Positions 10,154 to 45,762 of a stretch of 64,000 nucleotides of DNA are shown piece after piece. The notes below the pieces were generated by a model. That model saw nothing but the letters and a program-made list of their open reading frames with translations. It was not told the origin of the DNA and did no database searches. Made by a program: the position numbers and the translations under genes. Position 1 is the stretch's first letter. Every line of letters starts with the position of its first letter. This DNA is from Scyliorhinus canicula (taxonomy: Eukaryota), in assembly GCF_902713615.1 (NCBI RefSeq), contig NC_052162.1, forward strand, positions 110,015,811 through 110,079,810, given 5' to 3'.

Positions 10154-10223
10154 ATGCACGCTCCACCTACCGGACTACCATATGCCATTTATTACACTGC
10201 ACTTGCTGTCATCGCAGTCCCTG
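10154..10223 (+). CDS. GPR139/GPR142-like class A GPCR paralog 1, coding exon 1
   Basis: aaaATG in good context encodes MHAPPTGLPYAIYYTALAVIAVP+G. Donor CTG|GTAACG at 10223/10224. 'YY..LA...VP' matches the TM1 start of GPR139-like receptors. Confidence 0.85.
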
Positions 10224-10299
10224 GTAACGTATCAGAACCATTGTTCTCAAAGTGTCGCAATACTAACGGGTAGAAGATTTGCAGCCATCGTATAAATGT

Positions 10300-12080
10300 C
10301 TAATTTGGCCCCAACGCGAGTACTGTTTTAATTTTCTGAGACTGTACCTCACGAAGGATAGACTTGACATTCACGAATGATGAAAAGCAGCTTAGCAAGA
10401 ATGATCCCAAGTGTCAGGCAGTTAATTATCAGGAACGGCTGCGGACATTTCACGTGCTGTACATTTAGTGTGTAAGATTAAGACATTAGTTAACAGAGTT
10501 AGTAAAATAATTAATCGGATCAGTGCGAAACAAACATTTCGTCTGTTGAAGATGTTCAGAACAAAGGGCAAAACTGATAAACCAGCTCGGAACATGGGTT
10601 ATTGAAGGGTAAGTCATCCCTGATGGTCCTGAGTTGATTTCACGAAATGGTGATAAACTGGTAAACCTTAAAATGTCTATGGTTGTTATGAATACTGGCT
10701 TTCAGAAAACACTTGGTTAGACCGCAGACGTCGCAATTTTGCTGAACGTTGAAGTTATTGCAATTGCAGTAATATGATGGAAATGCTTGAAAAACGTATC
10801 AAAATCAGAATGTTTCTAAACTGACGAGATGTGAAGAAACAGTTCCGACTACTGTAAGTATCCAGCACTAAAGGGCACAGCATTGACGTATTTAGTAAAA
10901 TAAGCGGAATTTATACAAGGGGATGCCTGTTCGGCTGCAACTGGCTAGCGTGAGTGACAGGGTGCCTGAGACAGTGGTGGAGATAGGCCCAGTTGAAGCA
11001 TTCAGAATCTAACTGGACAGTTATCAGTAAGATAAAACGTGGAATACTCTGAGGAGAAAGTGGCGGGATATCCCTTGGTGAGGGGCGCAATCAGACTGAC
11101 GGTGGAGCAACAATTGGTCAAATGGCATCGTGGCATTGTGCTGCGCAGTAATAATTCTATCATTCTGTGAACCTGGATAAGCAGCATGACGCAGAGATAC
11201 GGGTAAACCATATGTATGGCAAAAATGTGCCTGCCGTTTCCTGCTCGGATCTCTCTTGGCGTCTCAATCGTTAGCCCTACTCATTCGCGGCTGAGATGCT
11301 GATGGTACAAATGTAAGTTGCATCTGAAGCATATAGATGGAAATATAAAAGTGGGAATAAATGGCAACAGATAAATTAAACGGGCAAAACTTCGCCAAAA
11401 GGTGATCGAACTGAAAAACATGACGTTATCCACGTTGTGCATGAATATGATAGAATAGCTTATTGTTAATGCTTTAATTTCATTTTTACAAAGCTCTTTT
11501 TGTTGTCGAATTAGCTTTGTTATGTGTGAATGCATGACACCTAGAACGATAGAATGGTTCCTGCACAGAAAGAGACTCCTCGGCCCTTCACGTCTGCACT
11601 GCCATTCTGCATTCAGTTCATCTAGTCGCATTCAGCCATCCCTTTCCCTTTCGCAAATATATATTTTCACATCAGCTGATAATCTAATGTTGTTTCGAAA
11701 ACCGCTACAAAACCTGTCACCACCACAATCTCACACAGCGAATAACGCTGCAGAGAAGTGATTTGTCCTCCCTTTGCCATTGCTTCACTTGCCTACAGCA
11801 TTAAATCGGCCTCCTCTTCTGTTCAATCGTTCGGCTGAGGGAAGCATGTTCTCCCCCTCTGCTCTGCACAGACATGTACTGATTTGGTCACCACTTTCAA
11901 ATCTTCCGTCAATATTTTCATCCCGAAGATCCTAACCGCAGTTTCTCCAATATTTTCTCGCAACTGAAGTAAATTGTTTGTGGTGACATTTTCCGCAATC
12001 TTTCCCGCACCAATTCAAAAGCTATTGACACCAATAAAAATGTGATGTCCAGATATAGATGAAATTACTTCATTATTGTG
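10300..12080. mobile_element. Very old CR1-like fragments in the GPCR intron
   Basis: Degenerate CR1 3'-region and RT-like stretches (+ at ~10300-11170, - at ~11540-12080); no usable ORF. Confidence 0.4.
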
Positions 12081-12333
12081 CAGCCAGAACATTGAATGCA
12101 TTTGAAAATTATGCAAATGTTAAATTATATTTCGATCGTTTGGAAGATATTTCTTTCATCCGAGGTGTCTTTCCCGTCTAACCGCCATCTCCACATTATT
12201 ATATCAACTCTTGTCTCTTCACGCCCAGATACTCGGCTCAGAATCAGAAAATGAATGTCCATACATTTTGGTCAATGTGATGATATTGTTGCGTTTGCAG
12301 AATGTAATTTATCTATCCTTCTCTTTCATGCAG

Positions 12334-13244
12334 CAAATTTAGTAGCGATTGTCATCCTGTCCAGAGGAAAATGCGGCCTGTCGGTATGTATCACTCGATA
12401 CCTTGTCTCCATGGCAGTGACGGATCTCCTGGTCATTATCACAGCCGTGATATTAAATCGTATTAGTGGCATTTATTTTCCTGGCAGCTTCTTGTCCATC
12501 ACTCCTGTGTGTAGCCTGAGCATTTCGCTAACTTACGCTGCCAGAGTGAGTTCCGTCTGGTTAACAGTCACTTTTACGTTTGATCGATTTGTGGCTATAT
12601 GCTGCCAGAAGCTGAAAATAAAGTACTGTACCGAGAAAACGGCGACTGTGGTGATAGGGATTGTCTGCACGCTGGGCTGTTTAACCAATATCCCCTGGTA
12701 CTTTATCCACGAGCCTATTTACATAGTTGACAATATCCCGTGGTATTGCAGACTGAAGGACATCCGTTATACTTCATTCTTTTGGACAGCATATGACTGG
12801 TTCGACCGTATTTTGACCCCGTGTGCTCCGTTCATTCTTATTCTTCTGTTGAACGCTCTGACCGTCAGACACATTCTAGCAGCCAGTAGAGCCCGGACGA
12901 GACTCCGTGCAGAAAGCAACAGGGACAAGCAGAGTGACCTGGAGATGGAGAGTCGGAGAAAGTCCATCGTTTTACTCTTCACCATCTCTGGCAGCTTCAT
13001 TCTGCTTTGGATGACGTATGTTGTACAGTTCTTATATGTGAGAATTACAAATGACTATAACATCAAAAGCTTCAGTGATCCCAAATTCATTCTCCAGGAA
13101 TCCGGAAACATGCTTCAACTCCTTAGTTCCTGCACCAACACATTTATTTACGCAGCGATTCAGAAGAAATTCAGAGAGGAGTTGCAAAATGCTTTCGAAT
13201 ATCCACTCAGCATAATTATTAAATTATTTATACAGAAGTTGTAA
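12334..13244 (+). CDS. GPR139/GPR142-like class A GPCR paralog 1, coding exon 2 (spliced protein 326 aa)
   Basis: Polypyrimidine acceptor cttctctttcatgcag|CA; phase-1 join gives VP-A-NLVAIVILSRG. TM2 'MAVTDLL', TM3 'FTFDRFVAIC', TM7 'SCTNTFIY', helix 8 'KKFREEL'. Open to TAA at 13244. Confidence 0.92.
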
Positions 13245-15363
13245 CACAGTCCATGAGTCGTACTTCTTCTTTAAATCTAATAATTGACTTATTTCTTCCC
13301 ACACAGCAAAGGAAAGAAAAGTAATTAGTTTGTAATGCATTTCAATTCCAGTGAATTATTTCCCAAATGTAACCACACCACATAAAAGTGTTAAATTAAG
13401 AAATTATGAAAGGATTCATATTTTATGTTTTATTTTTATTCACCAGGTGATCACCCCGTTCTTGTATCGGGTATACATTGACCACAATTCAATAACAAGT
13501 GATTTTATTGTCTAAGTTGAAGACGCATGGTCCATTGGAGATACAAATGCCACAACATGCCTGACAGGTCACTCCATACTACTAGTGATGGAAATGTCTC
13601 AATACAATAACAATATCCTTCATCTGGCCATGAGTTTAACACCAACATTTGCTGAGAGATCAACATCAATGTCACAGTCATTGAGCAGGAATATTGGCTC
13701 TGGATATTTCTGTTTTTAAAAATGTACTTCCGGATGTTGGCATCACTGGTTCGGCCAGCATTTCTTTTTCATCCTTAGGTGCCCTTCAGAAGGTGGTGGT
13801 GAGTTGCCTTCATTAGCCTCTGCTGTTCCTGAGGCGTAGACACCCCTACAGTGCTTTTATGAAGGGAGCCAGTGACAGTGAAGGAACAGTGATATATGTC
13901 CAGGCCTGGTTGATGAGTGACTTGGAACAGAACGTCTTGATGGGGTTCGGAGGTACCTATTCTTCGTGTATTTTAGATGGTATTGGTTGTTGGTTTGGAA
14001 GATGCTGCCCAAGGAATCTCAGCGAATTCCTGAGGTGCATCTTGTAGATGGTACTCATGGCTGCCAATGTTTGTTGGTGGGAGAGGGTTTGAAAGTTTGT
14101 GAAGGGGGTAACAATCAACCGGAATGCTTTGTCTTGGATGGCGTCGAGATTCTTGAGTGTTGTTGGAGCTGTAATCGTCCAGGCAACTGAAGAGTATTCC
14201 ATTACACTTCCGACTTGTGCCTTGGACCGGCTGCAGGATGAAGACGTGACTTACTCGGTGTAGTATTCCTAGTCGTTGATCTGTTCTGGCAGCCACTGCA
14301 TTAATAAGGCTACTCCAGTTAAGTTGCTGATCAATAGTAAGCCGACGATATTGATTGTCGGGGATCTACCGATGAAAATGCCATTGGATGTCATGGGCGA
14401 TGGTTAGATCCTCTCTTGTAGGAGGTGGCCATTGCCTGGCACTTGTGTGGCGCGAATTTAACTTATCACTTTTCAGCCCAAACCTGGATAATGTCCAGGT
14501 TTTGCTGGATTTGAAAATGAACAGCTTCATTATCTGAGGAATCATCAATGGTGCTGCAGATTGTGCAGCCATCTGCGAACATTCCAACATCTGACCTTAT
14601 AATGTAGGGAGGTCATTGATGAAGTAGCTGAAAATGGTTAGGCCTAGAATACGCTCTGAGGAACTCCTACAATAATGATCTGGAGTTGAGATTAGTGACG
14701 TACAGCTACCACAAACATCCTATTTTGCGTCACAAATGACACCAACCAGTGGAAGTGTTTTCCCTGATTCCGATTGGCCCTTGCTATTTCGGTTTTCTTG
14801 ATGCCATACTCCGTTAAATGCAGTCTTTACGTCAATGGCAGCCAGTCTCCCCTCACCTCTCCCATTCTGTCTGTTGTCCAAATGCCTTATTGCTGAGTAA
14901 GTGTCACTTGAGAGCACTTCCGATGACTTATTACATCATTTTATTGACGATGGAGAGTGGACTGGCAGGAGAGTAATTGCCTGGGTCGGATTTTTCCTCT
15001 TCTCTCTGCACATGGCACACCTGGTCAATTTCCCACATCGCTAGACATATGCCAGTGTTGTAGCTGTACTGCCATAGATTGGCTAAGGTGCGGCAAGATC
15101 TGGAGCAGATTACCCGATATTGTAAGGGGCCATAGCCTTTGCATTAACCAGTAGCTTCAGTTGTTTCTTGATACCGAGTTCAGTGAGTCATATTGGTCGA
15201 AGTCAGACAGATGTCATGCTGCGAACCACAGGGGGAGACGGGGAGTATCATCTTCTCAGTACTTCTGGCTGTTGATTGTTGCAGATGCTTCATCCTCCTT
15301 ATGTTCATCAGCGAAGATTGAGGATTCAACATTGAGGATGCCGATATTTGTGAAGCCCGCTGC

Positions 15364-15960
15364 AAAGAACAAAGATCAATGCAGCACAGGAACTTCGGCC
15401 GCCCAGGCCTGCGCCGAGCATGGTGCCTGCCTAATCTAAAACCGCATGTACTTACAGAGTCCGTATTCTTCCATTCCCACCCTATTCATATGTTTGTCAA
15501 GATGCCTCTTAAATGCTGCTATCATACCTGCTCCTACCACTTCCCCCGGCAGCGAGTTCCATATATTTACCACCCTTTGTGCAAAAGACCTGCCTCACAC
15601 ATTGGTTCTAAACTTTCCCTATACATTTTAAACCTATGCCCCTCGTACCTGACTCTCCTTACCGTAGGAGAGAACATCTGATTATCCTCTCTGTCCATGC
15701 CACTCATAATCTTGTAGACCGCTATTTGCCCGCCTCTCAATCTCCGAGGTTTCAGTAAGAAGAGACCGAGTTAATATAACCTCTGCTCAGAGCTGATACC
15801 CTCCATACAGGCAATATCCTAGTAAACCGCTTTTGTACCCTCTACAAACCTTTTGCATCCTTCTGCTAGAGTGGGGATCAAATTTTTACGCAATATTCCA
15901 AATGAGGCTCAACAAAGGTTCTCTACAGCTGCAACATGACTTCCCAATTTTTATAGTCAA
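15364..15960 (-). mobile_element. CR1 3' fragment nested in the Zenon-like LINE
   Basis: (aaagaac)n tail plus 'cagcacagg..cttcggcc' CR1 3' end and ORF2 C-terminal sequence. Confidence 0.85.
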
Positions 15961-16796
15961 TTGCCAATGTTTATATTCAATTATATTTTTATATTCAGTT
16001 AGTTATTTAATTGTCCACCATAATTCACGGCGATTGCAGAATCGGTTAGCTCAGTCTATTGCTTGCTGTTATGCTGTTTTGCACACCAGAAGTCCTGTGT
16101 TGCAGCTTCAACAGGTTGGAACCTCATTTTTAAGTATGTCTGCTTTTGTCCCTTGCACGCTCTTTTGCACTCTTCATTTGATCAATGTTGATAATCTGGC
16201 TTCGTGGTACTGGCATATTGGGAATATGCAGGGCCATGAGGTTTCAGATTGCGGTTGAGTGCATTTCTGCTCCCGTTGTTGTCCCACAGTGCCTCATGGT
16301 TGGGCAGTCTTGAGTTGCTAGATCCGTTATAAGTCTACCCCATTTAGCACGGTTGTAGTGCCACACGAAGGAAGGTATCCTCCATGTGAAGAGACGTTGA
16401 CTCCACAAGGATTGTGTGGTGGTCATGCCTACCTATACTGTCATGGACAGATGCATCCACAGCAGAATATTGCTGCGGAGGAGGTGAGGTACATTTATCC
16501 CTTGTTGTTCCCTAATCAATTGCAGAATTTCCAGCCTAGCAGACCTTTTTGGACCCTGTCAGGTCGTTTTGATGACTACTAACGAGCCACATTTGGTAAT
16601 GAATATTAAAGGCCCACACCCAGAGTATCGTCTGTGCTCTTGCCACCTTCAGTGCTCCCTCGCATTAAATGTGGAGGAGTACTGGTAAATGGTCTGTGTT
16701 AATCAGCAACAGGTTTCCTTGCCCATGTTTAACCTGAAGGCATGAGACTTTATGAAGTCCAGAGTCAATGTTGAGGACTCCCAGGGAAACTTCGAA

Positions 16797-19660
16797 CGAG
16801 TTAGTTGGTAAAAGGTAGCTGTTCACATACCAATAACTGAGTGGCAGTTACCTGGCAATCATCTGAAACCCTATTGGAGGCAAAGGTGTAAAAGTCACAG
16901 AGTTGATGTGGCGGGTGACTTTAGCAAGCACGATTTTGAGTGGCACGGTAGCACAGTAGTTACCACAGTTGCTTCACAGCTCCAGGGTACCTGGTTCGAT
17001 TCCCAACTTGGGTCACTGTCTGTGCGGAGTCTGCATGCTCTCCCCGTGTCTGCGTGGGTTTCTTCCGGGTGCCCCTGTTTCCTCCCACAGTCCAAAGATG
17101 TGCAGGTTAGGTGAATTGGCCATGATCAATTGCCTTTACGATGTGTGGGGTTGCTGGATTACGGAATAGGATGGAGGTGTGGGTTTAAGTAGGGTGATCT
17201 TTCCAAGAGTCTGTGCAAATTTCGATGGGCCGAATGGCCTACGTTTGCTCTGTAAGTGCTATGATTCTACGAACTTTCCCTATGTTGACTGGGACTCAAT
17301 TAGTGCTAGCGGGTGGATGGGGCAGAGTCTGGAAGGAGATTCCAGGAGGGATTTTGGAAACAGTATGTAAATAGTCCAACGAGAGAAGGCGCAGTACTGA
17401 ACCTGATAATGGGGAATGAGCCTGGCCAGGTGGTCGATGTTTCAGTAGGGGGCACTTCGGGAACAGTGACCACAATTCAGTAAGCTTTAATGTGCTGATG
17501 GATAAATATAAGTGTAGTCCTCAGGTGAAGGTGCTGAATTGGGCGAAGACTGATTGCAACAATATTAGGCAGGAACTGAAGAATGTAAATTTGGGGTAGA
17601 ATTGAGGTTTGAAAGCAAACAAATATCTGGCATGTAAGTTGATAGGAATTGAGGAGCGGCAAGTTCCCGTAACTGTGAAGGATAAGTATGACAAATTTCG
17701 GGAACATTGGATAACGAGAGATATTGTGAGCCTAGTCAAAAAGTAAAAGGAAACGTTTGTCAAAGCAAGGAGGCTGGGAACACATAAACGAACTGTGGAA
17801 TACGAGGAAAGTATAAACAACTTCAGCATTGAGTCAGGAGGGCTAAAGGCTTCAGTAAAAGTCATTTTCCAGCATTATTAAGGAAATTCCTGAGGTTTTT
17901 ACACATATATAAAGAGAAACATTGTAGCCAGGTAGAGGGTTGTCCCACTGAAGGACAGCGGAGGGAATCTATGCGTGGAGCCACAGGACACGGGCGAGGT
18001 ATTAAACGAATACTTTGCGTCAGTATTCACCAAAGAGAAGGACTTGGTGGATGATTAGTCTGGGGAAGGGTATGAAGATAGTTTGGGTCATGTTGATATC
18101 CAAGCGGAGGAGGCATTGTGGCCTTGGAAAATGGTAGAAAGACAAGTTTCCCGACCGCCTTTTGGGATATATCCCAGAATACAGAGTTGTATAATGACTG
18201 GTGACAGGGGAGGTCCCAGAGGATCTGAGAATAGCCAATGGTGTTCCTTTCTTTAAGAAGGGTAACAAAAATAATCCAGATGATTACACGCCGGTTCGTC
18301 CTCCGTCAGTAATAAGATCATTATTAGAGATTATTCTTCGGGACAGGATTTACTCCCACTTGGAAATAACTGGACTTATTAGCGAGAGACGACATGTTTA
18401 TGTGAAGGGGAGGTCGTGTCTGAATAACTTGATCGAGTTTTTCGAGGAAGTGACGAATGGATTGATGAGGGTCGGGCAGTAGATGTTGTCCACGTGGATT
18501 TCAGTAAGGTGTTTGACAAGGTCCCTCATGGCACACTGGTACAGAAGGTGAAGTCACACGGAATCAGAGGTGCACTGGAAATATGGATACATAACTGATA
18601 TGGTCATACTTTACAGAGGGTAGCAGTGGAAGGTGCGTTTCTGAATGGAGGGCTGTGACGAGTGGCGTTCCACAGGGATGAGTGGTGGGATCTTTGCTGT
18701 TTCTAATATGAATAAATGATTTGGCAGAAAATGTAACTGGTTTGATTAGTGCATTTGCGGACAACACAAAGCACTCGGATAGTGATGAGGACTGTCAGAG
18801 GACTCAGCCTGATATAGATCAATTGGAGACACGGGCGGACAGATGGGAAATGGAGTTTAATCCAGACAAGTGTGACATAATCCATTTGGAAAGTCTAACA
18901 TAGATGGGAAATATGCAGAAAATTACAGAACCCTCAAGAGTATTGATAGGCAGAGGGTTCTAGGTGTACAGGTATACAGGTCACTGAAAGTGGTTACGAC
19001 GCAGGTGGAGAAGGTAGTCAAGAAGGTATACAGCATGCTTGCCCTCATCAGCGGGGCATTGAGTTTAAAAATTAGCAAGTCATGTTGCAGATTTATAGAA
19101 CCTTAGTTAGGCTGCCCTTTGGATAGAGTGTTCAATTTCGGTCGTCACACTACCAAAAGGATGTCGAGACTTTGGAGAGTGTCCAAAAAAGATTTACTGG
19201 GATGTTGCCTGGTATGTAGGTCATTAGCTATGAGGAGAGGCTTGGAGTAATTTGGTTTGTTCTCACTGGAACGACGGAGTTTGAGGGACGACCTGATAGA
19301 AATCTAGATGATTATGTGGGGCATGGGTAGAGTGGATACTGAGAAGCTTTTTCCAAATATGGAAGAATCAATTACTGGGGTGCATCGATTTCTGGTTCGA
19401 GGGGCAAGGTTTAACGGAGATCTACGAGGCACGCATTTTATACAGGTGGTGTTGTGAGCCTGGGACTCGCTGCCGGGAGAGCTGCAAAAGCAGATACGAT
19501 GGTGGCTTCTCAGGGGAGTCTTGACACATACATGAATAGGATGGGAATAGAGGGATATCGTGCCCAGAAGAGTACGAGTTTTTAGTTCAGACGGGCACAA
19601 TGGTCGGTGCAGGCCTGGAGGGCCGAAGTGCCAGTTCCTGTACTGTACCTTTCTTTGTTC
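16797..19660 (+). mobile_element. Decayed CR1 LINE (5'-truncated ORF2) nested in the Zenon-like LINE
   Basis: 'GEVPEDLRIANGVPFFKKG..GRSCLNNLIEFFEEVT', 'LISAFADNTK', and a CR1 3' tail ending ttctttgttc at ~19660. Confidence 0.88.
16938..17270 (+). mobile_element. HE1-type SINE inserted in CR1
   Basis: A box 'tggcacggtagcacagtag', B box 'ggttcgattcc', HE1 core, ctatgattcta tail. Confidence 0.9.
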
Positions 19661-20834
19661 TTCGTATACCACTGTGTCGGAACCTCTGCTGGGTCTGTCA
19701 TGCCGATGTGAGTGGACACACCCATGATTAGTGATAGACGTGTCTGGGACATTGACTGTATGGCATGATTCTATGAGTAGTACTATGTCAGCCTGTTGCT
19801 TGACTAGTCTGTTAGACAGCTCACCCACATTTGACACAAGCTCCAGAGGTTAGTAAGGAGGACTTTGCAGGGTCGACAGGGCTGAGTTTGCCGTTGTCGT
19901 TTCCGGGCATACTGGGTTCCATTCGTTTTCCGTGTGTTTGTAGCGGTTGAATACAACTGAGTAGCTATTTAGACCATTTCTGGAGTCACAATGGGCCAGA
20001 CCAAACAAGGTAAGTATGGCAGATTTCCTTCCCTAAAGACATTAGTGAACCAGATGGGATTTTACGACGTTCGACAATGATTTCCTTTTAATCTTTAGAC
20101 TTTTAACGCCTGATATTTTGTTGAATTTCAATTGCATCAACTGCCGTGGTGGTATTCTTAAACGGTTCCCTGAACCATCACCCTGGGTCCCTGTATTACG
20201 ATCCCAGCGACAATGTCAGTACGGCAACCCATCCGATGAATAGCGTCGACACAAATTCAATTCTACTTGATCTATCAAGTACCCTACGAACAAAAACCGT
20301 TTGATTTACTTTCCTCTCCACGCGTCATTTCGCAGATCTTACTGGATTTTTATTCCATGTGATTATCGTGATGCAGTGTCTTAAACGTCGTTTCAGCCTG
20401 CACATATCTTTCCCGTGATTTCACGGTCCATTATTCCGACACGTTTTTGCAGTCGTGTTCATAGTACAGGAGTGGGATAATTTTGGCACAGATAAAGTCT
20501 GCTTGATTGAGAATATTTCTGAATGTTCCAGGTCTGTAGGATAGACGTTAGGCAGTCTGCATAATTTGAAATTGGAGAAACTTCAGATTGAAGGAGAGAA
20601 GTGGGATGCTTTGTAGACTGAATTAAAGTATTGGGAAGGGAGGGGGGATCCGTTCAGAGTGGGGTAAATTTAAGGTTGCTCTCGTCTGGAGCATTTTGAT
20701 GCGGTTTGGATTGTTCTTGTGCAAAAGCGCAAAGCGGCCATCGCATGGAATTTTCGGAACAAAACGTTTCGTCCATGTTCAACTTGACGAGAAAAGCAAA
20801 ACATCGAAAAAAAAGGAAACAGATCGGAAGGAAG

Positions 20835-31907: not shown

Positions 31908-32951
31908 GCACCGGCCAACTTCACCACTGGTAATGCCAAGTGGCCCCACCCAACTCCATATGTATATATATGTGCATATTTAATCCATACCTACATGGCA
32001 TACCTGGCATATAATAACACCATCGTCTGTGTCTCCATAGCTGTGTCTCTGTCGCATTTATAGTCATAACGTTATGTCAAGGAGAATTCAGGTCTTTCAG
32101 AAACTTCTCAATGCCCACTGCGAAGATATTTCAAATGTCTCAAAGATGTTTGTGGAATTTTTTTAACACGACCCCAACGAGAGTGGTTCAGAGATGAGGA
32201 GACTAGCAGATGACACAGACAGAGAGTGTGAAAAAGAATGAAAGAGAGAGACAAAGACTGGGAGAGGTACTGAGAAGCAAAGTCTGTCTAAATATTTTGG
32301 ACGCATGTGCAATTATTAGAAACCAAGCTGACGTTTTTCTCTCAATGCACAAGTTCACGTTTTCGTTCCAAAACCGTTTTTTGGTTACACTTCCGCTTGT
32401 TACGTGTCCAGTAAACAACTCAGTTATCGCTGAGTTTGAATTCCTGATGTACATATTTTCTTTCCCATCTTCATTTTTTTTAAAATCAGCCCCTGAACTT
32501 TGTCGGTTCCTTTAGGATTTGTTCAGCTTTGAGCTCTCAGCTGTTGGGGCAAGCATCCTTCCTTAATATCCTCCCATTTCCATAATTCTTGACATCTCAG
32601 TGAATCAAGATTTTTGCGACTACAATTGTTCGGTATTCCCATTAACTTTGTCTTGAGACTTACTTCTCATTTCATATCGCCTGAGTTCATTCATGCGTTC
32701 TCAGCCTGGCTCTGGTTTGAGGATTGGTGATCCGAGGTAAAATCTCCACCAGTCAGCTCTCCCGGTCAAAGGGAAAAGCAGCCTACGATAATCTGCGAAA
32801 TGGCGACTTCACTTCTGTTTTTGTTTGTCATTGAGTTGATCTTTCCAGTTGACGTCGGCAGAATAGTAGTTGCCAACGGAAAACATTTGATTCAATAATT
32901 ATTTACTAGAACCAAACTAGATCCTATTGGTTATTTCTATCAGTATAATCA

Positions 32952-33123: not shown

Positions 33124-33209
33124 ACCTTCCGTTTGGTCCAATTCCACCTTCCTAGGTCTGTTCCGTGCAACTAAATCTTGGGGTGTTGCATTTTTACTCC
33201 CAGAATTAA

Positions 33210-36200
33210 ATGTTATTTAAAATTTAGAGTACCCAATTATTTTTTTCCAATTAAGCAGCAAGTTTGCATGGCCAATCCAGCTGCCCTGCACATCTTTTAT
33301 TTTGTGGGAGCGAAACCCATGCAAACACGTAGAGAATGTGCAAACTCCACACGTTAGTGCTCTTTGGGGGGGTTTAAACTAATTCAGCAGGGGCATGGGA
33401 ACCTGGATTGTAGTTTTGGGGTACGGGAGATTGAGAGTATAGAGGTCAGGAGCACAGATTTGACTTCGCAGGAGGGTGCCAGTGTTCAGGTAGGTGGTTT
33501 GAAGTGTGTCTACTTCAATGCCAGGAGTATACGAAATAAGGTAGGGGAACTGGCAGCATGGGTGGGTACCTGGGACTTCGACGTTGTGGCCATTTCAGAG
33601 ACATGGATAGAGCAGGGACAGGAATGGTTGTTGTAGGTTCCGGGGTTTAGGTGTTTTAGTAAGCTCAGAGAAGGGGGCAAAAGAGGGGGAGGTGTGGCGC
33701 TGCTAGTCAAGGACAGTATTACGGTGGCGGAAAGGATGCTAGATGGGGACTCTTCTTCTGAGGTAGTATGGGCTGAGGTTAGAAACAGGAAAGGAGAGGT
33801 CACCCTGTTGGGAGTTTTCTATAGGCCACCTAATAGTTCTAGGGATGTAGAGGAAAGGATGGCGAAGATGATTCTGGAAAAGAGCGAAAGTAACAGGGTA
33901 GTTGTTATGGGAGACTTTAACTTTCCAAATATTGACTGGAAAAGATATAGTTCGAGTACATTAGATGGGTCGTTCTTTGTCCAATGTGTGCAGGAGGGTT
34001 TCCTGACACAATATGTTGACAGGCCAACAAGAGGCGAGGCCACATTGGATTTGGTTTTGGGTAATGAACCAGGCCAGGTGTTAGATCTGGAGGTAGGTAA
34101 GCACTTTGGAAACAGTGACCACAATTCGGTGACATTTACGTTAGTGATGGAAAGGGATAAGTATACCCCGCAGGGCACGAGTTATAGCTGGGGGAAGGGC
34201 AATTATGATGCCATTAGACATGACTTAGGATGTGTTGGTTGGAGAAGTAGGCTGCAAGGGTTGGGCACACTGGATATGTGGAGCTTGTTCAAGGAACAGC
34301 TATTGCATGTTCTTGATAAGTACGTACCAGTCAGGCAGGGAGGAAGGGGTCGAGCGAGGGAACCGTGGTTTACCAAAGAAGTGGAATCTCTTGTTAAGAG
34401 GAAGAAGGAGGCCTATGTGAAGATGAGGCATGAAGTTTCAGTTGGGGCGCTTGATAGTTACAAGGAAGCGAGGAAGGATCTAAAGAGAGAGCTGAGACGA
34501 GCAAGGAGTGGACATGAGAAGTCTTTGGCAGGTAGGATCAAGGAAAACCCAAAAGCTTTCTATAGGTATGTCAGGAATAAAAGAATGACTAGGGTAAGAA
34601 TAGGGCCAGTCAAGGACAGTGGTGGGAAGTTGTGTGTGGAGGCTGAGGAGATAAGCGGGATACTAAATGAATACTTTTCATCAGTATTCACTCAAGAAAA
34701 AGATAATATTGTGGAGGAGAATGCTGAGACCCAGGCTATTAGAATAGATGGCATTGAGGTGCGTAGGGAAGAAGTGGTGGCAATTCTGGACAAGGTGAAA
34801 ATAGATAAGTCCCCGGGGCCGGATGGGATTTATCCTAGGATTCTCTGGGAAGCCAGGGAAGAGATTGCTGAGCCTTTGGCTTTGATTTTTAGGTCATCAT
34901 TGGCTACAGGAATAGTGCCAGAGGACTGGAGGATAGCAAATGTGGTCCCTTTGTTCAAGAAGGGGAGTAGAGATAACCCCGGTAACTATAGGCCGGTGAG
35001 CCTAACGTCTGTGGTGGGAAAGGTCTTGGAGAGGATTATAAAAGATACGATTTATAATCATCTAGATAGGAATAATATGATTAGGGATAGTCAGCATGGT
35101 TTTGTGAAGGGTAGGTCATGCCTCACAAACCTTATCGAGTTCTTTGAGAAGGTGACTGAACAGGTAGACGAGGGTAGAGCAGTTGATGTGGTGTATATGG
35201 ATTTCAGTAAAGCGTTTGATAAGGTTCCCCACGGTCGGCTATTGCAGAAAATACAGAGGCTGGGGATTGAGGGTGATTTAGAGATGTGGATCAGAAATTG
35301 GCTAGTTGAAAGAAGACAGAGAGTGGTAGTTGATGGCAAATGTTCAGAATGGAGTTCAGTTACGAGTGGCGTACCACAAGGATCTGTTCTGGGGCCGTTG
35401 CTGTTTGTCATTTTTATAAATGACCTAGAGGAGGGCGCAGAAGGATGGGTGAGTAAATTTGCAGACGACACTAAAGGCGGTGGAGTTGTAGATAGTGCGG
35501 AAGGATGTTGCAGGTTACAGAGGGACATAGATAAGCTGCAGAGCTGGGCTGAGAGGTGGCAAATGGAGTTTAATGTGGAGAAGTGTGAGGTGATTCACTT
35601 TGGAAAGAATAACAGGAATGCGGAATATTTGGCTAATGGTAAAATTCTTGGTAGTGTGGATGAGCAGAGGGATCTCGGTGTCCATTTACATAGATCCCTG
35701 AAAGTTGCCACCCAGGTTGATAGGGTTGTGAAGAAGGCCTATGGTGTGTTGGCCTTTATTGGTAGAGGGATTGAGTTCCGGAGCCATGAGGTCATGTTGC
35801 AGTTGTACAAAACTCTAGTACGGCCGCATTTGGAGTATTGCGTACAGTTCTGGTCGCCTCATTATAGGAAGGACGTGGAAGCTTTGGAACGGCTGCAGAG
35901 GAGATTTACCAGGATGTTGCCTGGTATGGAGGGAAAATCTTATGAGGAAAGGCTGATGGACTTGAGGTTGTTTTCGTTAGAGAGAAGAAGGTTAAGAGGT
36001 GACTTAATAGAGGCATACAAAATGATCAGAGGGTTAGATAGGGTGGACAGCGAGAGCCTTCTCCCGCGGATGGGGGTGGCTAGCACGAGGGGACATAGCC
36101 TTAAATTGAGGGGTAATAGATATAGGACAGAGGTCAGAGGTGGGTTTTTTACGCAAAGAGTGGTGAGGCCGTGGAATGCCCTACCTGCAACAGTAGTGAA

Positions 36201-36453
36201 CTTGCCAACATTGAGGGCATTTAAAAGTTTATTGGATAAGCATATGGATGATAAGGGCATAGTGTAGGTTAGATGGCCTTTAGTTTTTTTTTCCATGTCG
36301 GTGCAACATCGAGGGCCGAAGGGCCTGTACTGCGCTGTATCATTCTATGTTCTATGTTCTATGTTCTACGTACAGTGATCCAGAGCCGGATCGAGCCTGG
36401 GACCTCTGCGCTGTGAGGTAGCAATGCTAACCACTGCGCCACCGTGCTGCCTC
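33210..36453 (-). mobile_element. A-tailed HE1-like SINE split by a young CR1 (halves 33210-33354 and 36368-36453)
   Basis: The halves join as ...caaactccacacgt|acagtgatccagagccgg...; ACGT is duplicated at both junctions. Confidence 0.85.
33355..36367 (+). mobile_element. Young CR1 (HER1-like) LINE: ORF1 tail plus complete ORF2 with a single nonsense codon
   Basis: ORFs 33364..33636 and 33694..36267 are in frame, separated by one TAG (33634-33636). APE endonuclease (NARSIRNK, ISETW, GDFN, SDH), RT (QHGF, DFSKAFD, GVPQGSVLGP, FADD), (CTATGTT)n tail. Confidence 0.97.
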
Positions 36454-38490
36454 GCCATATTAAACTTGAATGTTGGCCAAGGGATTGCCCTATGCAATCT
36501 AAATAATTCAATAGATTGTTTTTGAGAAAATTGTCTGTTTCAGGGAAATGTGAGGTGGAATATTTTACTTGTAATTTCTTGGACCTGACTAGCAAGGGAG
36601 GGATGTATGCAGAGATGATAAATCAACGGTACTTCGATAAAGTTTAAGATGCCTCCCAGTATTTTAATAGCAATATTGTCAGATATCTTGCAACTTGCCT
36701 CATACAATGTACATTAAGCCTTCTATGTTTCTGACGGCTAGTCAACTACTTCAATGTTACAAGAGGATGCACGTTTACAGAAATCTGTAATCCAATAAAA
36801 GTCTAATTTTCTTGCCTCAAACTGAAGGTATAAGATCTATTGTATTTTGCAAATTGGAATAAGAACTAGCATTCCTGTGTCGCGAACAATAAGGTTCGTA
36901 GTGCGCAGACATGATATATAGTTGTTTAATTTGAGGTGCAGGATTTGATCGGTTGAAAAAGCGATGATTGGAATATTCTATTTGGTGGATCGGCTCACTG
37001 GAAAATCCCGAAGAGAATGATATCGTTCAAGCGATTCTGCCGCGCTCACCCTTGAAATGCATGCACAATGTCATTAGAGAAATCATCAAATACAAAATGG
37101 AATATGCCAGAACTTCAGATTAAATGAATGAAGCCATATTCTACCCTAGGATATACTTATTTTCTACATTGCACTGGAATATCGGGAGAGTCTCAGACGT
37201 GTTATTGTGAATTTGAATTCTGTCATTTTCTATTATTGAATGTCGAAAAAGAATGAATTCAAGGATGGAATAATTCGCCTGCGCCCCAAACACAACTCCG
37301 CCCCCTCCCTCCTCCCGTAAAACTGGTGTGATTACATGTACGTGAGCGTACCAATGGGAGTTTGCATTTTGCTCTATTTATGAACTCTTTTATGTCGTGA
37401 TGTACATTGTCACAACTTTGGTCTTGAGATACAAATAGACAGCATTGCCATCTGTGTCACGGAGGTGTGAAATGAAAACGAAATCTGAGTGTCTGAAGTG
37501 AATGGAAAAATGGTGACATTTGGATATCGTTGCAGCACAATGTGAGTTCTTTGACAAAAAATAAAATATGCAGATTCAGTCATAATGGTGACAATCTGGA
37601 AATAATGGATGTTCAACAATATTTAGCGGTGCGCCAAGTGGGAAATTACGGGATTATGAAACAATACCAGTGAGGTTCACATTCCATTGACATTTTAAGA
37701 CTGCAGGTGGTGTGATCAAAGTTTTCAAAATAATAATGGAAACTGAGAGCATGTGTCGAGAGAATATTGCTTGGCCATTGCAGGGTCTAGGACTAGGGTT
37801 GTATTCGCAAATTAAAACAGTAGACTGAATTTTTTCAAGACTAAATTTAAGAAACATTTCTTCACATAATAGAAGTTTAGTACTGACTCTCTCTCTCTCA
37901 ATTCCCCAGTTGCACCATTCTGCAAATCTGCCTCCAATATATGTTTTCCTTTCATTCCGAGAAATTGAACATCCCCAATATTGATTGCTTCACTGTTGGT
38001 GGCCATGCTCTCGCCTATCTGGTGTCTAACGCTGGAAATACTCCCTAAACCTCGAAGTGTCAACATTCCCGTTTCCCCCTCCAGAACATTTCTAAAATCG
38101 ATCTTTGGCTAAACAATTGGTCGTTTATCCATGATTTTCGCATTGGCTAAGAATTGTCCGTTTCTGTGTGAGGCTCCAGTGAATATTCCTTCGACTTCAA
38201 TAAATGCAAATGCCTTTTAAAAAAAACTGTTATCTTGTGTGCATCCTGACAGTTTCTGCCCATGTCCTGCAGACTGTAAGTAGAAGAGAAATATACACTC
38301 CGATCAGCTACTCTATGTCTGAAGTTTCTCAGACTCAACTCCTGTCCATGTTAAATACACTACACATGACCGAGAATTGTCACTGACATCTGATAACACA
38401 CGTTTTCTGTTTGACTGTGTCATGTCCACCCCTATACAGTCCAGGTAAAGAAGAGTATCACCCCTCATTTCTTAGTACACTTGCCATCTA

Positions 38491-38675
38491 GGGGCTGTTT
38501 AGCAAAGGGCTAAATCGCTGGCTTTGAAAGCATGCCAAGCAGACCAGCAGCACAGTTCTATTCCTTTACAGCCTCCCCGAACAGGCGTCGGAATGTGGCG
38601 ACTAGGAGCTTATCACAGTAATTTCATTTGAAGCCTACTCGTGCCAATAAGCGATTTTCATTTTCATTTCGTTTC
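38491..38675 (+). mobile_element. Short tRNA-derived SINE
   Basis: Same family as 32952-33123. Confidence 0.85.
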
Positions 38676-38914
38676 ATCTGGTTTCTTGTGTTAGTGCCAG
38701 CTCCAGTTTATATTTCATATAGTTCAGGGGAAAGCGAATGATTTCCACACCTTTCATACCCCGTTTCATGTTGCTTCCAGTGTCATCTCCTCTCTCGGTC
38801 CATCACACTTCACGTGAAACAGAATATTCACTGCCACCTGTTACAGCACATCCCTTGTGCATCGAAGTGTCAGCTCCGTCCGTGGGTGCAAACCTCAGAA
38901 TTTCACTTCAATCT

Positions 38915-41900: not shown

Positions 41901-42340
41901 TTGCTACTATGGAGGTCTTACATTTCTTCCTACTTCCTAACTCCTGAAACTGGCCTTGCAAGACCATGAAACTGTCCCTCCCTATGTTCATGGTTCCTCT
42001 GGTTGTTCATCCTCCTTTCCAGACGTTTGCCCAGCCCATCCGTTATGTCCCGAACCTTTGCACCGTGAAGGAACAGATAAAAAGGGAATAAGAATCACGG
42101 GTGCAAACTACACAGTGTATCCCGCGAACTATTGAGTCGACCACGACTACCATCTTTCCAATCTGCCTGCCGGCCTCCCTCTCTTTTTCTGGAGAAACCT
42201 TATGCATCTTGGTACTATGGGTTTCCCTCGTCATCAATACATGATTTCGTCGTGTTGCTCACTTCAGAGTAGCTGTGCAACTTCTCTGAGGCAGTATTAT
42301 TCTGAAACATGTGCAGCAAAGCGCCGTCTCCCCCACTCTC
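38915..42340 (-). mobile_element. Old near full-length CR1 LINE (ORF1 esterase-like plus ORF2)
   Basis: ORF1 'VVVVDSIVRG' and 'GVHLN' (SGNH-like); EN 'LNCTYENAQNVVN..VALTYMW'; C-terminus 'TRGHS.KI..FTQRCVGVWNTL'. Confidence 0.75.
39896..40189 (+). mobile_element. HE1-type SINE with 8-bp TSD
   Basis: TSD ATGTGGCA at 39888-39895 and 40190-40197; CR1-type tail. Confidence 0.9.
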
Positions 42341-44869
42341 TGTCTCCAGAAAATGGATTATACACTTTTGAAATAAAAGCGACTGAGCATTAAGAATTCC
42401 CGTTGCTTGTAAAGTTACCTGGAACGCCCGTAAGTTATGAAGTTATGACACTTGATTTAAATAGTCCAAATACATTGTTGGGATGATATGGAGTGATATG
42501 TAGACATTTCCTGTCTCTTCAGGGCAGAGCGAACTGACATTCCTCATTTGCATGTCAGCCAGAGAGAAGATTTTGAGCAGGCTTTCGTCTATTTTACTCT
42601 AAATTGTACCTGTCTGTTTTTTGGATTTTCTTGGTCCATTCAGATTCTCTGAAGGATCCCTGCTGTTTATTATCCATTTGTACAATGGTCCAAACGGTCT
42701 AAAATTATCCCACTCACGGTTTCCGGTTATACTGAAGCACCTCATAATAAAGGCAGGTGACTCTTGATGCCGACAGGTGTGTGTGAATGGTCAATGACAA
42801 TCCAACAACCTCATGTGGACCTTCAACTTGTAGCTTTCTATTTCCTGTCCATCCGTTGCTTTGATGCCGCCAGTAAATATCGAAACTTCGCAAATCATAA
42901 TTGAGAAAGCTGGGGACATTGGTCTTTCCGATTCCCCGTATCTCGATCACTCATTATTTCCTACACATCATTTTTTTCTCTCTGAACATCATCTTTTCCA
43001 AAGCACACGACTGCAATACTACCCAAAAAATCTTCATCACTAAAAGAACCGGTGCCTGGTAAGCACGGTTTAGAATCTTCATTTCACCCAAGCTCGTGTG
43101 CTCATATCCTTTCTATAATGTGCGTGCCTAAACTGAACGAGTTTAATTCCGTGAACTTCAATCAATACATATTCTGAAGGGCTGGAACTTTACTTTTAAC
43201 AACCGTCCCTCTTGAGTTACCTTTGATGATTTTCTCCCTGTCAAATCTCCTTGTCGCAGTCAGGTGAATTGTCTCTACCTGCCTGTTTCTAACTTTTCCC
43301 TCTCTAAACCTGCCGATTATCTCAGAAATTGCCAGCAAGATTCTCTTTCATGCCTTACTCGAATTCCAACGCACAAGGTAGGTCATTTTATTGGTGTCTT
43401 CAGCAACACGAAGACGGTATGTGATTTGTGCAAAGGTATTAACAGTTTGCGTTGAAAATATATGTTTGAACCTCCAATAATTCTGCTGTGACATAGATTT
43501 CATTCAACTAACCGTTCCTAGTCCACATCCGTTCAGTTACGCCTGGTACACAATATCGGTGCTTGGTGGGAGAGCATAAATATAGCTATACTCGAACTAA
43601 CCCAGCCAGGCATGCCATAAAAGTGTGATGGAGAATGTGCAAAGGGAGCTTTATCGAATGCTATGCATTAATCTAATGCTATGCTGTTGTTTTCGTGGAA
43701 TGTTTGCAAGAGACATTTTATGCCAAAATTCATTCTCCATCGAAACCCTTGATGCACCTGTTCTGGGAGTGTTCGTTGCTGAATCTGTAGAGGGAAATTT
43801 ACTCGGTATCTTACACCATGCTATATCTCCATTTTATTGCTTATTCAACAGCCTTGAGAGAATGTTTTCTATGTCCGTAACCCCATTCTACGCATGTACT
43901 CGGTGGGTTGAATTCGAAAAGTGTAGTTGGATATTTACTTTGTATCTTTCCCCGTGCTGTACCTGCCCTGTGTGATTTTTGTGGGGCAACTGAAAAGAGA
44001 CACGTCCGTCATATATAACCCCGTGATTGATGAGGAAAAGCTAGAGGGACCTTTATTCTGTATCTCTATTACAGACTCTCTCGTGCCCTCTCTCTGTATC
44101 TGATATATCTTTCTATCTCTGGTAATCACTGTGTCTCCTTGTGTCTCCCTCTCTCCGTGTCTGTCTTTGCCATTATCTATCTCATCACCTATCAGTGACG
44201 GCGGTCATTGGTCCTACCTTTCCTCTTTAACCACCCCATCCCACGGTAATTGAATTTTCGCCTCACTCCCTTGACACTTGATTATTAATGGCATGGTGCC
44301 TTGATGCTGGTGGACACATATCCCTGTCTTAATCTGTGAGTTACATTACAGTTTGTGTCCTAGCTCCCTCTCTTTGAACTCGCTTTCTCACCAACTCCCT
44401 CCATTTATGTCACTGCGGGAATGAAAGCAATGACCAAAAAGCGTGAAGAAGAGAGATTTTCAGTATTTTGCCACTTGACTGGAGGGAAGTGAGGTCAGTG
44501 GATGGGTTTGTTGTCCATTTGGTGAGGCGGACTACTTTGATGCACAATTGAAGTGTAAACCTGCAGGTGAGATACTGGGTGTTTCTTTGTCCGTTTTGTA
44601 TCATAGAAACTAGACTGGTTCGATCACAGTCAAATTTCCACCCCAAATGGACAGTGGGAAGCCGCTCCCACGTTGGAAATGTAAAATAACAAGAAACGAT
44701 TAAGGAAACCCCAGGTTACTGGGTTCCAAACAAAGGCATATGCCACACCAGTAGAAATTATGAATCTTTCAAAACTGTAATCAGTTCACGCATAGGTAAG
44801 ACACTTCACCCATGGCAAATACGAAATAAAATGAGAAAATCCTCAAAAAACCTTGCTATTCTGTTCGTA

Positions 44870-45762
44870 TCATGATCGAGAAATTGAAGTGATGGGATGT
44901 TTCAACACATTTTTCAACTGTTCTCTAAACTTTGTCTGCGTCACAGCATAAATCGCTGTGTTTGTGCAGCAACTCAGCAACTGCAGCATGAAACCTAATT
45001 CCAGAACATATGAATCTAAATCAAATAATTTAATCCCCACCCACGACATCCGCTTCCATATAGAGTAAAGCATTAACAGTGACCATAACAGTATGAAATT
45101 GGCTGAAATAACATATAGTAAAATGATGGATTTTTTTCGACTCTCCATCTCTGGGTCTTTCGCATCATGTTCGCGGTTGCGTCCTCGGAGTCTCCTGCGA
45201 TTTCTGCTGGTCTCTAAAATATTTCTTACAGTGAAAAGATTGAGCAGCAGAATCAGTAAAAATGGGACACATGGGTTTATGATGTAGTGGAGGAACTGAA
45301 TTGCTGCCCAGACCGGAGATGTTACAATAGCCGATGAGAAATAACAAAACCACGGTTCGTTGTAATACAAATACCGACCTTTTAACATAAAATACCAGAA
45401 AATGTTCTTTACAAAGCTCAACGCAGCCACTGATCCCAGAACTATGGACGCCATTTTCTTGCTGCAGTATTTATGTTTCAGCTTCGGGCAACAAATGGCC
45501 ACAAATCGATCAAAGGTGAAAGTTACCGTGAACCAGACAGAACAGTCAGTGACAGCATAAAGGACGGATGCATGGATATTGCACACGGGAATTGACTTCC
45601 TGAAAATAAACTGTTCCTCAAAAACAAGTGCAATATGTCTCAATATCAAGTCGAGGATAATGACCAGGAGATCTGCCACTGCCATGGCAACGAGGTAACA
45701 TGTGACACATTTGGAAAGACCACAGTTTTTTCCAGAGAGTACCAAAATCGTTACTAAGTTAA
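44870..45762 (-). CDS. GPR139/GPR142-like class A GPCR paralog 2, coding exon 2 (exon 1 not found in window)
   Basis: Acceptor ttctttgcattcttcacag|TT at 45763/45762, same phase-1 position as paralog 1 (x-NLVTILVLSG). 'MAVADLL', 'FTFDRFVAICC', 'SCCTNTAIY', 'KFREQL'. Open reading frame to the stop at 44870. Confidence 0.88.

What the first reader, a model, noticed from the sequence alone, without database searches (positions are those of the whole stretch)
10154..45762. Two divergent GPR139/142-like orphan GPCR paralogs: possible unrecognised expanded shark receptor (chemosensory?) family
Seen: two intact 7TM reading frames, tail-to-tail about 31.6 kb apart. They share the same phase-1 intron in TM1 and conserved intracellular signatures (CGLS.C.T.YLV.MAV.DLL, FTFDRFVAICC.KLK.KYC, D.EMESR.KSI.LL, LQLLS.CTNT.IY). 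Extracellular loops and outer TM halves differ strongly (roughly half identical overall by eye). Known: mammalian GPR139/GPR142 are single-copy aromatic amino-acid sensors, and as I recall GPR139 has its intron at the same 'GLP|AN' position; cartilaginous fish have few classical OR genes. Inference: conserved signalling face, variable ligand face and a clustered compact gene layout are typical of chemoreceptor or immune receptor repertoires, so this may be a lineage-expanded sensing family. This is the best candidate for an undescribed system here.
Basis: partly seen in the sequence, partly recalled or inferred. Interest (0 to 1): 0.72.

Follow-up and report, generated by a model that had tools for sequence, protein, structure and literature searches.

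The report
Two shark-expanded GPR139-like receptor genes
The window holds two real receptor genes from a very large shark-and-ray gene family that databases mislabel "GPR139"; the family is real and no paper on it turned up, but nothing yet shows that it serves smell or taste.

Summary
Both 7TM reading frames are real. They lie tail-to-tail with 31.6 kb of LINE-rich DNA between them and are 49% identical.

- **Gene A** (10154-10223 + 12334-13244, + strand, 326 aa) is a complete two-exon gene with a phase-1 intron. It keeps every residue conserved in its subfamily and has close counterparts in sharks, skates and rays (80-96% identity). Contigs from one study cover its exon 2 and leave out the intron before it, so it is probably transcribed.
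- **Gene B** (exon 2, 45762-44870, - strand, 296 codons) has the matching acceptor site. Its first exon is not recognisable anywhere in the window, so "intact" is unproven. It sits on a long branch in a subfamily seen so far only in sharks, and no sampled protein is more than 69% identical to it.

Neither gene is a GPR139 or GPR142 orthologue: identity to human GPR139 is 22-24%. They belong to an elasmobranch-wide expansion of at least 114 clusters at 50% identity, with at least 12 other annotated catshark copies. The nearest bony-vertebrate kin found is an amphibian gene, plus one sturgeon hit. The family lacks GPR139's Arg6.51 and mostly carries an acidic residue at 5.42.

A chemosensory role remains untested. 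The scan has already met this family on other DNA of this genome. Eight literature searches found no paper describing it.

The parts
10154..10223 (+). Gene A, coding exon 1: start codon, 7-residue N-terminus and first half of TM1. It ends with the first base of a split codon (phase 1).
   Evidence: Sequence read (ATG...CCT G|GTAACG). It fits the family N-terminal consensus MH.P......AIYY..LA...VP. A regex scan found it as the only family-type first exon in the window, apart from one spurious hit at 32476. It is not covered by the RNA-like contigs.
10224..12333 (+). Gene A intron (2,110 bases, GT...AG).
   Evidence: Depth is zero in runs X1 and X2 over 10885-12263, while exon 2 is covered.
12334..13244 (+). 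Gene A, coding exon 2 (rest of TM1 through helix 8, stop codon included).
   Evidence: - ORF with a Pfam 7tm_1 match.
- 96% identical to Scyliorhinus torazame P0001.
- Contigs of runs X1 (12344-13105) and X2 (12333-12980) start at the acceptor site.
- Keeps 97/98 family-conserved and 120/120 subfamily-conserved residues.
13245..13361 (+). Gene A, start of the 3' untranslated region (minimum extent).
   Evidence: Contig of run X1 spans 13141-13361 (record 3). The true end is unknown.
44870..45762 (-). Gene B, large coding exon (second half of TM1 through helix 8, stop included; 296 full codons after a split codon). Its first exon is not identifiable in the window.
   Evidence: - ORF, acceptor TTCACAG|TT and Pfam 7tm_1 match.
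- Best database identity is 69%.
- Keeps 94/98 family-conserved and 140/151 subfamily-conserved residues.
- Runs X1, X2, X3 and X25 hold 57-78% of its sampled words.

Best explanation
**What the genes are.** They are two rhodopsin-class (class A) G-protein-coupled receptor genes of the small-spotted catshark or a very close relative. They belong to two different subfamilies of one very large receptor family found here only in sharks, skates and rays. This is a distant side branch of the GPR139/GPR142 group, not an orthologue of either.

- **Gene A** is a complete two-exon gene and a conserved orthologue shared by sharks and batoids. It is probably transcribed.
- **Gene B** is a divergent member of a subfamily seen so far only in sharks. 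Its large exon is open and keeps the family signatures. Its first exon lies outside the window or is lost.

**How they most likely work (inferred).**
- A ligand binds in the outer transmembrane pocket. That pocket is lined by residues fixed within a subfamily but different between subfamilies: 3.33 Y; 5.42 D in A-type and E in B-type; 6.48 W; 6.51 Y or L/F; 7.39 N or F.
- The signal then passes through W6.48, the invariant DRF and NTxxY motifs and the highly conserved inner TM3/ICL2/TM6 surface to a heterotrimeric G protein.
- The family has lost the Arg6.51 that pairs with the amino-acid backbone in GPR139 and mostly carries an acid at 5.42. It is therefore unlikely to sense free aromatic amino acids the way GPR139 does.
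- A cationic ligand (an amine or a basic peptide) is my best guess, at about 35%.

Whether the ligands are external (chemosensory) or internal is open.
For: **Shown**
- Two 7tm_1 frames, 49% identical. Splice sites read directly.
- Family size and taxonomy.
- Maximum-likelihood tree (quick search). The elasmobranch rows group together (support 87) and group with the amphibian gene at 100. winA falls in a 9-row set with shark, skate and ray proteins (95) on an end branch of 0.029. winB falls in a B clade whose named rows are all sharks (100), on an end branch of 0.43.
- Distance from GPR139: 42 bits, E 6.5e-10, and 22-24% identity by Foldseek. Human and zebrafish GPR139 are 70% identical (PMC7318219).
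- GPR139 is nevertheless the nearest solved receptor to the family profile: 105 bits against 83 for NTSR1.
- AlphaFold model of the S. torazame counterpart of A: pLDDT 87, seven helices plus helix 8.
- Pocket residue tables, read against the GPR139 mutagenesis and binding model (PMC5430874).
- Conserved-column retention.
- Contigs limited to exon 2 with a border at the acceptor site.

**Inferred:** G-protein coupling, the ligand pocket and the ligand class.
Against: - No ligand, G protein or tissue is known for any member.
- Gene B may not be functional: no first exon was found, it has a long branch, it is at the 5th percentile for conserved residues, and it has Q instead of the subfamily's E at 5.42.
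- Runs X1-X3 are not on record as RNA. Exon 1 of gene A and the splice junction itself were not covered.
- True GPR139 and GPR142 sequences could not be put into the tree. 'Side branch of the GPR139/142 group' therefore rests on PDB ranking and shared motifs.
- The 5.42 acid is a single-residue argument.
Confidence: 0.8

Rival explanations
1. The family is an exteroceptive chemosensory repertoire (olfactory, taste or solitary chemosensory cells), and A and B are two of its receptors.
For: - Copy number and diversity are of the order seen in chemoreceptor families.
- Pocket-lining positions differ strongly between subfamilies.
- The outer half is more variable than the inner half.
- Gene B has no close counterpart even in the congener S. 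torazame, which fits birth-and-death turnover.
- Both genes appear in contigs of only one study and in none of the 14-16 presumed RNA runs listed from about ten other studies, which fits restricted expression.
- Sharks have few classical odorant receptors (Sharma et al. 2019, as cited in PMC11979771).
Against: - No expression data tie any member to a sensory epithelium.
- The catshark paper found no GPCR among the 50 most specific genes of its brain-and-olfactory-epithelium library.
- Gene A is a slowly evolving orthologue, 80-88% identical across elasmobranchs.
- Outer-face variability is not specific to chemoreceptors.
Confidence: 0.3
2. They are receptors for internal signals (neuropeptides, amines or metabolites), as GPR139/142 and their invertebrate FMRFamide-type relatives are thought to be. 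The expansion would reflect diversified internal signalling.
For: - The nearest solved receptors are GPR139, then the neurotensin, neuromedin-U, PrRP, ghrelin and TRH receptors.
- Gene A has conserved counterparts across sharks, skates and rays.
- The amphibian sister gene appeared about once per species at 66-74% identity.
Against: More than 100 divergent subfamilies, and dozens of copies per chromosome in some sharks, are far more than any known vertebrate peptide-receptor family holds. No matching ligand expansion is known.
Confidence: 0.3
3. Gene B is a dead or dying copy: a lone large exon whose first exon was lost or separated by LINE insertions, still open by chance or recent origin.
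For: - No first exon in 18 kb upstream by four methods.
- LINE reverse-transcriptase ORFs lie in that interval.
- The end branch is 0.43, against 0.12-0.33 for the other B-type proteins in the tree.
- There are non-conservative changes at subfamily-conserved sites, including E5.42Q.
- An earlier scan note reports dead copies and lone exons of this family elsewhere (s1-236518).
Against: - 296 codons are open, with 94/98 family-conserved residues kept and mostly conservative substitutions.
- The acceptor site is good.
- Its words are held by the same RNA-like runs that hold gene A.
- Other family members have multi-kilobase gene spans: 8 kb for P0126.
Confidence: 0.2
4. They are simply the catshark GPR139 and GPR142 genes, as the database naming of their relatives suggests.
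For: RefSeq names for homologues. GPR139 is the best PDB hit. Gene A has two exons, like GPR139.
Against: - 22-24% identity to human GPR139, against 70% for the zebrafish orthologue.
- Loss of R244 and H187 equivalents.
- Thousands of paralogues.
- Even the closer bony-vertebrate kin score only 53-70 bits against GPR139.
Confidence: 0.02

Closest known systems
GPR139 (human; structures 7VUG and 9M42), sensor of L-Trp/L-Phe expressed in the brain
   Same: - Class A fold, and the best sequence and profile match among solved receptors.
- Two-exon gene.
- No proline in the NPxxY motif (NFFLY against NTFIY/NTAIY).
- Aromatic residue at 3.33 and W6.48 kept.
   Different: - Only 22-24% identical.
- Arg6.51 is replaced by Y (A-type) or L/F (B-type). 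H187 is replaced by D/E (Q in gene B). P6.50 is mostly lost. DRY is DRF.
- Very many copies instead of one highly conserved gene.
GPR142 (gut and pancreas aromatic amino-acid sensor), closest mammalian relative of GPR139
   Same: Presumed to belong to the same wider group. This rests on the literature (PMC7318219), not on a test here.
   Different: No GPR142 sequence was available to the tools, so no direct comparison was made.
'GPR210A/B' orphan subtypes proposed beside GPR139/142 from coelacanth, gar and a few fishes (Sci Rep 2019, PMC6504862)
   Same: These are non-mammalian orphan receptors placed next to GPR139/142. A coelacanth protein (P0351, 36% identical to gene A) is among the nearest non-shark relatives and keeps a basic residue at 6.51.
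   Different: - That study had no cartilaginous fish.
- In my tree the coelacanth and teleost proteins lie outside the elasmobranch + amphibian clade.
- I could not verify that P0351 is one of the named sets.
Amphibian 'probable GPR139' orphan gene (Pleurodeles, Xenopus, caecilians; one sturgeon hit)
   Same: Nearest bony-vertebrate relative found. It groups with the whole elasmobranch family in the tree (support 100), at 32-35% identity.
   Different: It appeared about once per species and is 66-74% conserved among amphibians. It keeps F3.33, P6.50, K6.51 and N7.39. It shows no expansion.
Fish clade III trace-amine-associated receptors, which use Asp5.42 for amine recognition (recalled from the literature, not checked here)
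   Same: An acidic residue at 5.42 is conserved within both subfamilies.
   Different: No sequence relationship beyond class A. This is a functional analogy only and is untested.

Membership tests
Rhodopsin-like (class A) GPCR, Pfam PF00001 | Significant match to the 7tm_1 profile over the whole core | tested here: met
   E 1.1e-21 (A) and 3.5e-19 (B), both above the gathering score.
Rhodopsin-like (class A) GPCR, Pfam PF00001 | Seven transmembrane helices plus helix 8 | tested here: met
   AlphaFold model of the 96%-identical S. torazame counterpart: pLDDT 87, pTM 0.84; helices 8-33, 41-71, 80-113, 124-147, 172-217, 226-262, 273-299 and 301-325.
Rhodopsin-like (class A) GPCR, Pfam PF00001 | Microswitch residues N1.50, D2.50, D/E-R-Y, W6.48, P6.50, NPxxY | tested here: inconclusive
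   N1.50, D2.50, DRF, W6.48, N7.49 and Y7.53 are present in both genes. P6.50 is replaced by T (A) or L (B), and P7.50 by T. GPR139 also lacks P7.50.
GPR139 orthologue group | High sequence conservation (human to zebrafish 70% identity, PMC7318219) | tested here: not met
   42 bits, E 6.5e-10 against human GPR139. 22-24% identity in the structural alignment.
GPR139 orthologue group | Agonist-pocket residues F109(3x33), H187(5x43), W241(6x48), R244(6x51), N271(7x38) (PMC5430874) | tested here: not met
   A has Y, D, W, Y, N. B has Y, Q, W, L, F. No member of either subfamily has a basic residue at 6.51.
GPR139 orthologue group | Two-exon gene with the intron in TM1 at the same codon | tested here: inconclusive
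   Gene A has two coding exons with a phase-1 intron after ...VP. GPR139 has two exons, but its intron position was not available to compare.
GPR142 orthologue group | Close similarity to GPR142 | not tested
   No GPR142 sequence could be fetched with these tools.
Elasmobranch-expanded GPR139-like family (unnamed) | Placement inside the elasmobranch clade, with family signatures (CGLS in ICL1, FTFDRFVAICC, EMESR before TM6, LQLLS.CTNT.IY) | tested here: met
   Tree (clade support 87; 100 with the amphibian sister gene). winA keeps 97/98 and winB 94/98 of the columns conserved in at least 90% of 197 homologues.
Vertebrate chemosensory receptor repertoire (functional class) | Large, fast-turnover multigene family | tested here: inconclusive
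   The family is large. Turnover is suggested for B, which has no close counterpart, but A is a stable orthologue.
Vertebrate chemosensory receptor repertoire (functional class) | Expression in sensory neurons or cells of a chemosensory epithelium | not testable with these tools
   Sample names are coded. Only one study's contigs hold the genes.

The most novel reading that the evidence does not exclude
The elasmobranch GPR139-like expansion is an unrecognised chemosensory receptor repertoire, possibly tuned to cationic odorants such as amines or basic peptides through the acid at 5.42. It would supplement the very small classical odorant-receptor and TAAR sets of sharks and rays. Gene A would be a conserved 'specialist' receptor and gene B a member of a fast-turning shark-specific branch.
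Probability: 0.25. Interest if true: 0.85.

Novelty: new variant of a known kind. Interest (0 to 1): 0.5.

Why it matters
Sharks and rays are known for acute chemical senses yet have very few classical odorant receptors. A class A receptor family with more than a hundred divergent subfamilies, found here only in elasmobranchs and hidden behind an automatic 'GPR139' label, is an obvious candidate for missing sensory or signalling capacity.

The label is also misleading. It implies an aromatic amino-acid sensor, while the family lacks the residue that holds the amino-acid backbone in GPR139.

For this window the practical results are:
- a clean two-exon model for a conserved member (A), suitable for deorphanisation;
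- a warning that B cannot be called intact.

Tried and rejected
- **Gene B's first exon.** I looked with tblastn of 70 homologue N-termini, a motif regex, an HMM of the last 24 residues of B-type first exons, and a generic scan for Met...hydrophobic...P + G|GT. Nothing credible turned up. The weak hit near 55146-55235 lies in LINE-derived sequence with no exon features.\n- **More family copies or relics in the window.** None found by tblastn.\n- **Tandem repeats.** None.\n- **RNA evidence.** Two oligo-dT RNA runs gave no reads on gene A's exons. The 14-16 presumed RNA runs listed hold next to none of either gene's words. This is not proof of silence.\n- **DNA of homologous loci.** The S. torazame and S. 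canicula loci could not be fetched because the files are too large. Synteny, and a B counterpart next to the S. torazame A gene, could not be checked. One look-up failed for lack of capacity.\n- **Tree with true GPR139/GPR142.** Those sequences ranked below the listing limits of every search, and I did not type them in.\n- **Sequences left out of the tree.** It used 17 A-type, 17 B-type, 33 representative and 14 outgroup sequences. All other hits were omitted.\n- **Site-wise dN/dS.** Not possible, because only protein sequences of relatives were available.\n- **Literature.** Eight searches found no description of the expansion.

Full report

Both match the rhodopsin-family 7TM profile well above Pfam's threshold. 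They align to each other at 49% identity over 291 residues with E 2e-72, and the four quoted motifs are present in both. They are tail-to-tail with 31,625 bases between the stop codons.

Gene A:
- An ATG at 10154 opens a 70-base exon that ends CCT G|GTAACG. The acceptor TCATGCAG|CA lies before 12334.
- The intron is 2,110 bases long and phase 1.
- The spliced product has 326 residues, the same length as its Scyliorhinus torazame counterpart.

Gene B:
- It has the corresponding acceptor (TTCACAG|TT before 45762) in the same codon phase.
- No first exon could be found on the minus strand between 45763 and the window end. I tried tblastn with 70 homologue N-termini, a motif regex, an HMM of B-type first-exon ends, and a generic start-to-donor scan.
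- 'Intact' and 'same intron' are therefore shown for A and only half shown for B.

No third copy or relic exists in the 64 kb. The rest of the window is LINE-rich: endonuclease and reverse-transcriptase ORFs lie at 33694-36267, 59163-61382 and 4651-5181.

**2. What are they?**

Each gene finds about two thousand database proteins. Every named hit among the 120 listed for each gene is from a shark, skate or ray, and nearly all carry the automatic label 'probable G-protein coupled receptor 139'.

- *Gene A's relatives.* They are about 325 residues long and occur in sharks of both superorders and in batoids. Identities are 96% (S. torazame), 85-88% (Pristiophorus, Heptranchias, Heterodontus, Mustelus) and about 80% (skates).
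- *Gene B's relatives.* All named ones are from sharks. They are longer, with N-termini carrying repeated N-x-T-rich units. None exceeds 69% identity, even in S. torazame.

An exhaustive search of 50%-identity representatives gave 114 clusters at E<=1e-30 and 205 at E<=1e-10. The ten deepest-branching representatives I looked up are all elasmobranch. Together with the earlier lists they show at least 12 other annotated S. canicula proteins on at least seven chromosomes or contigs.

**3. Relation to GPR139/142**

Human GPR139 is the best solved match, but weakly:
- 42 bits for gene A alone;
- 105 bits for a family profile, against 83 for neurotensin receptor 1;
- 22-24% identity in a Foldseek alignment that barely separates it from other peptide receptors.

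True GPR139 orthologues are 70% identical between human and zebrafish (PMC7318219).

The nearest non-elasmobranch proteins come from amphibians (32-35%), coelacanth (36%), a few ray-finned fishes and amphioxus. They too score only 53-70 bits against human GPR139, so they are not GPR139 orthologues either.

A 2019 survey placed coelacanth, gar and fish sets beside GPR139/142 and named them GPR210A/B. It had no cartilaginous fish (PMC6504862).

In my maximum-likelihood tree (quick search, 83 rows):
- the elasmobranch sequences group together (support 87);
- they join the amphibian gene at support 100.

A search with the newt protein found about one such gene per amphibian species at 66-74% identity, one sturgeon hit, and then only elasmobranch family members.

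The simplest reading is this: an old gnathostome gene, kept at about one copy per species in amphibians, was massively expanded in elasmobranchs. I could not add true GPR139 or GPR142 to the tree.

**4. The two genes differ in behaviour**

| | winA | winB |
|---|---|---|
| End branch | 0.029 | 0.43 |
| Clade | 9-row set with shark, skate and ray proteins (support 95) | B clade whose named rows are all sharks (support 100) |
| Family-conserved columns kept | 97/98 | 94/98 |
| Subfamily-conserved columns kept | 120/120 | 140/151 (5th percentile of its relatives) |

- winB's substitutions are mostly conservative. A few are not, including Q for the subfamily's E at 5.42.
- A is under clear purifying selection.
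- B looks constrained but divergent. A dying copy cannot be excluded, and I give that about 20%.

**5. Transcription**

Four runs of one 2021 study hold 57-81% of the sampled words of both genes. The 14-16 presumed RNA runs listed from about ten other studies hold next to none.

Laid on 9900-15800, contigs of two of those runs:
- cover exon 2 of gene A only (12333-12980, 12344-13105 and 13141-13361);
- show zero depth over 10885-12263 of the intron;
- have their border at the acceptor.

That is the pattern of RNA, although the runs are not on record as RNA. Exon 1 and the junction itself were not covered. Two oligo-dT RNA runs showed no reads on the exons. Expression thus seems real but restricted. 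The tissue cannot be read because samples are coded.

**6. Conserved inner face, variable outer face**

I took helix limits from an AlphaFold model of the S. torazame counterpart (pLDDT 87) and compared the two halves.

| | Intracellular halves and loops | Extracellular halves and loops | Test |
|---|---|---|---|
| A vs B identity | 61% | 32% | Fisher p 8e-7 |
| Column entropy, 197 homologues | 0.93 bits | 1.63 bits | p 2e-11 |

It is also the usual pattern among class A paralogues (general knowledge; I ran no control), so it does not by itself point to chemoreception.

**7. Pocket and likely mechanism**

Mutagenesis and modelling of GPR139 place its agonists, including L-Trp and L-Phe, between F109(3x33), H187(5x43) and W241(6x48). 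N271(7x38) and R244(6x51) hold the polar or charged part (PMC5430874). In the shark family:
- The aromatic residue at 3.33 and W6.48 are kept.
- R244 is replaced by Y in A-type (86/95) and by L or F in B-type. The bony-vertebrate relatives keep K, R or H there.
- H187 is replaced by D in A-type (76/95) and E in B-type (92/102).
- N271 is N in A-type and F in B-type.
- Across the other subfamily representatives these four positions vary widely.
- P6.50 is mostly lost, NPxxY is NTxxY, and DRY is DRF.

I infer ordinary class A signalling through a very conserved inner surface, with ligand specificities that differ by subfamily. GPR139-type recognition of an amino-acid carboxylate is unlikely. The conserved acid at 5.42 suggests a cationic ligand. 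This is a lead, not a result.

**8. Comparison and novelty**

The genes are members of a predicted but, as far as eight full-text searches show, undescribed elasmobranch expansion. The catshark genome paper on sensory systems does not mention it. This scan has already met the family on other pieces of this genome. One follow-up (s1-207377) reached the same view, including the missing pocket residue, which I re-tested here. I rate it a new variant of a known kind: a class A receptor expansion.

**Verdict**

B's integrity is unproven, and there is no compact cluster here.
- The 'expanded family' inference is right.
- The GPR139/142 label is only a distant affinity.
- The chemosensory idea remains an open hypothesis at about 25-30%.

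Noticed in passing
window 33694-36267 (+): An 857-codon open frame carries apurinic-type endonuclease and reverse-transcriptase domains. This is a LINE copy with a long intact ORF, lying between the two receptor genes. It may be a young element.
   Followed up: partly
window 59163-61382 (-) and 4651-5181 (-): Further LINE reverse-transcriptase ORFs. The first lies in the interval where gene B's first exon would be expected, so insertions may have stretched or broken that intron.
   Followed up: partly
window 13643-14627 and 15416-15800: Contig depth is very high (hundreds to about 2,000) in the RNA-like runs, and the oligo-dT RNA runs also give reads here, with many loose ends. These are transcribed interspersed repeats just downstream of gene A, not part of the gene.
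   Followed up: no
S. torazame gene model for P0001 (GCA_003427355.1): The model spans 87 kb for a 326-residue product. Its first-exon peptide differs from the window's at about half of 23 residues, while exon 2 is 96% identical. Its first exon is probably mis-paired from a distant copy or lone exon.
   Followed up: partly
B-type homologues, e.g. P0126, P0165, P0196 (N-termini): Many B-type proteins have long N-termini built from repeated units of roughly 13 residues rich in N-x-T sequons, of the type MDQNL..DWNVTT. This suggests a heavily glycosylated, length-variable extracellular tail. A-type proteins have only about 7 residues before TM1.
   Followed up: no
window 49145-49297, 52892-53056, 59850-60011 (-): The first 55 residues of a whale-shark family member's predicted N-terminus (P0144) match three separate places in the window at 40-45% identity. 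That gene model probably includes a piece of a repeat.
   Followed up: no
window 1-8000, 16000-20000, 34000-36000: Blocks of strong GC skew (-0.2 to -0.3, +0.17 to +0.27 and +0.41) alternate along the window. They probably reflect oriented repeat insertions.
   Followed up: no
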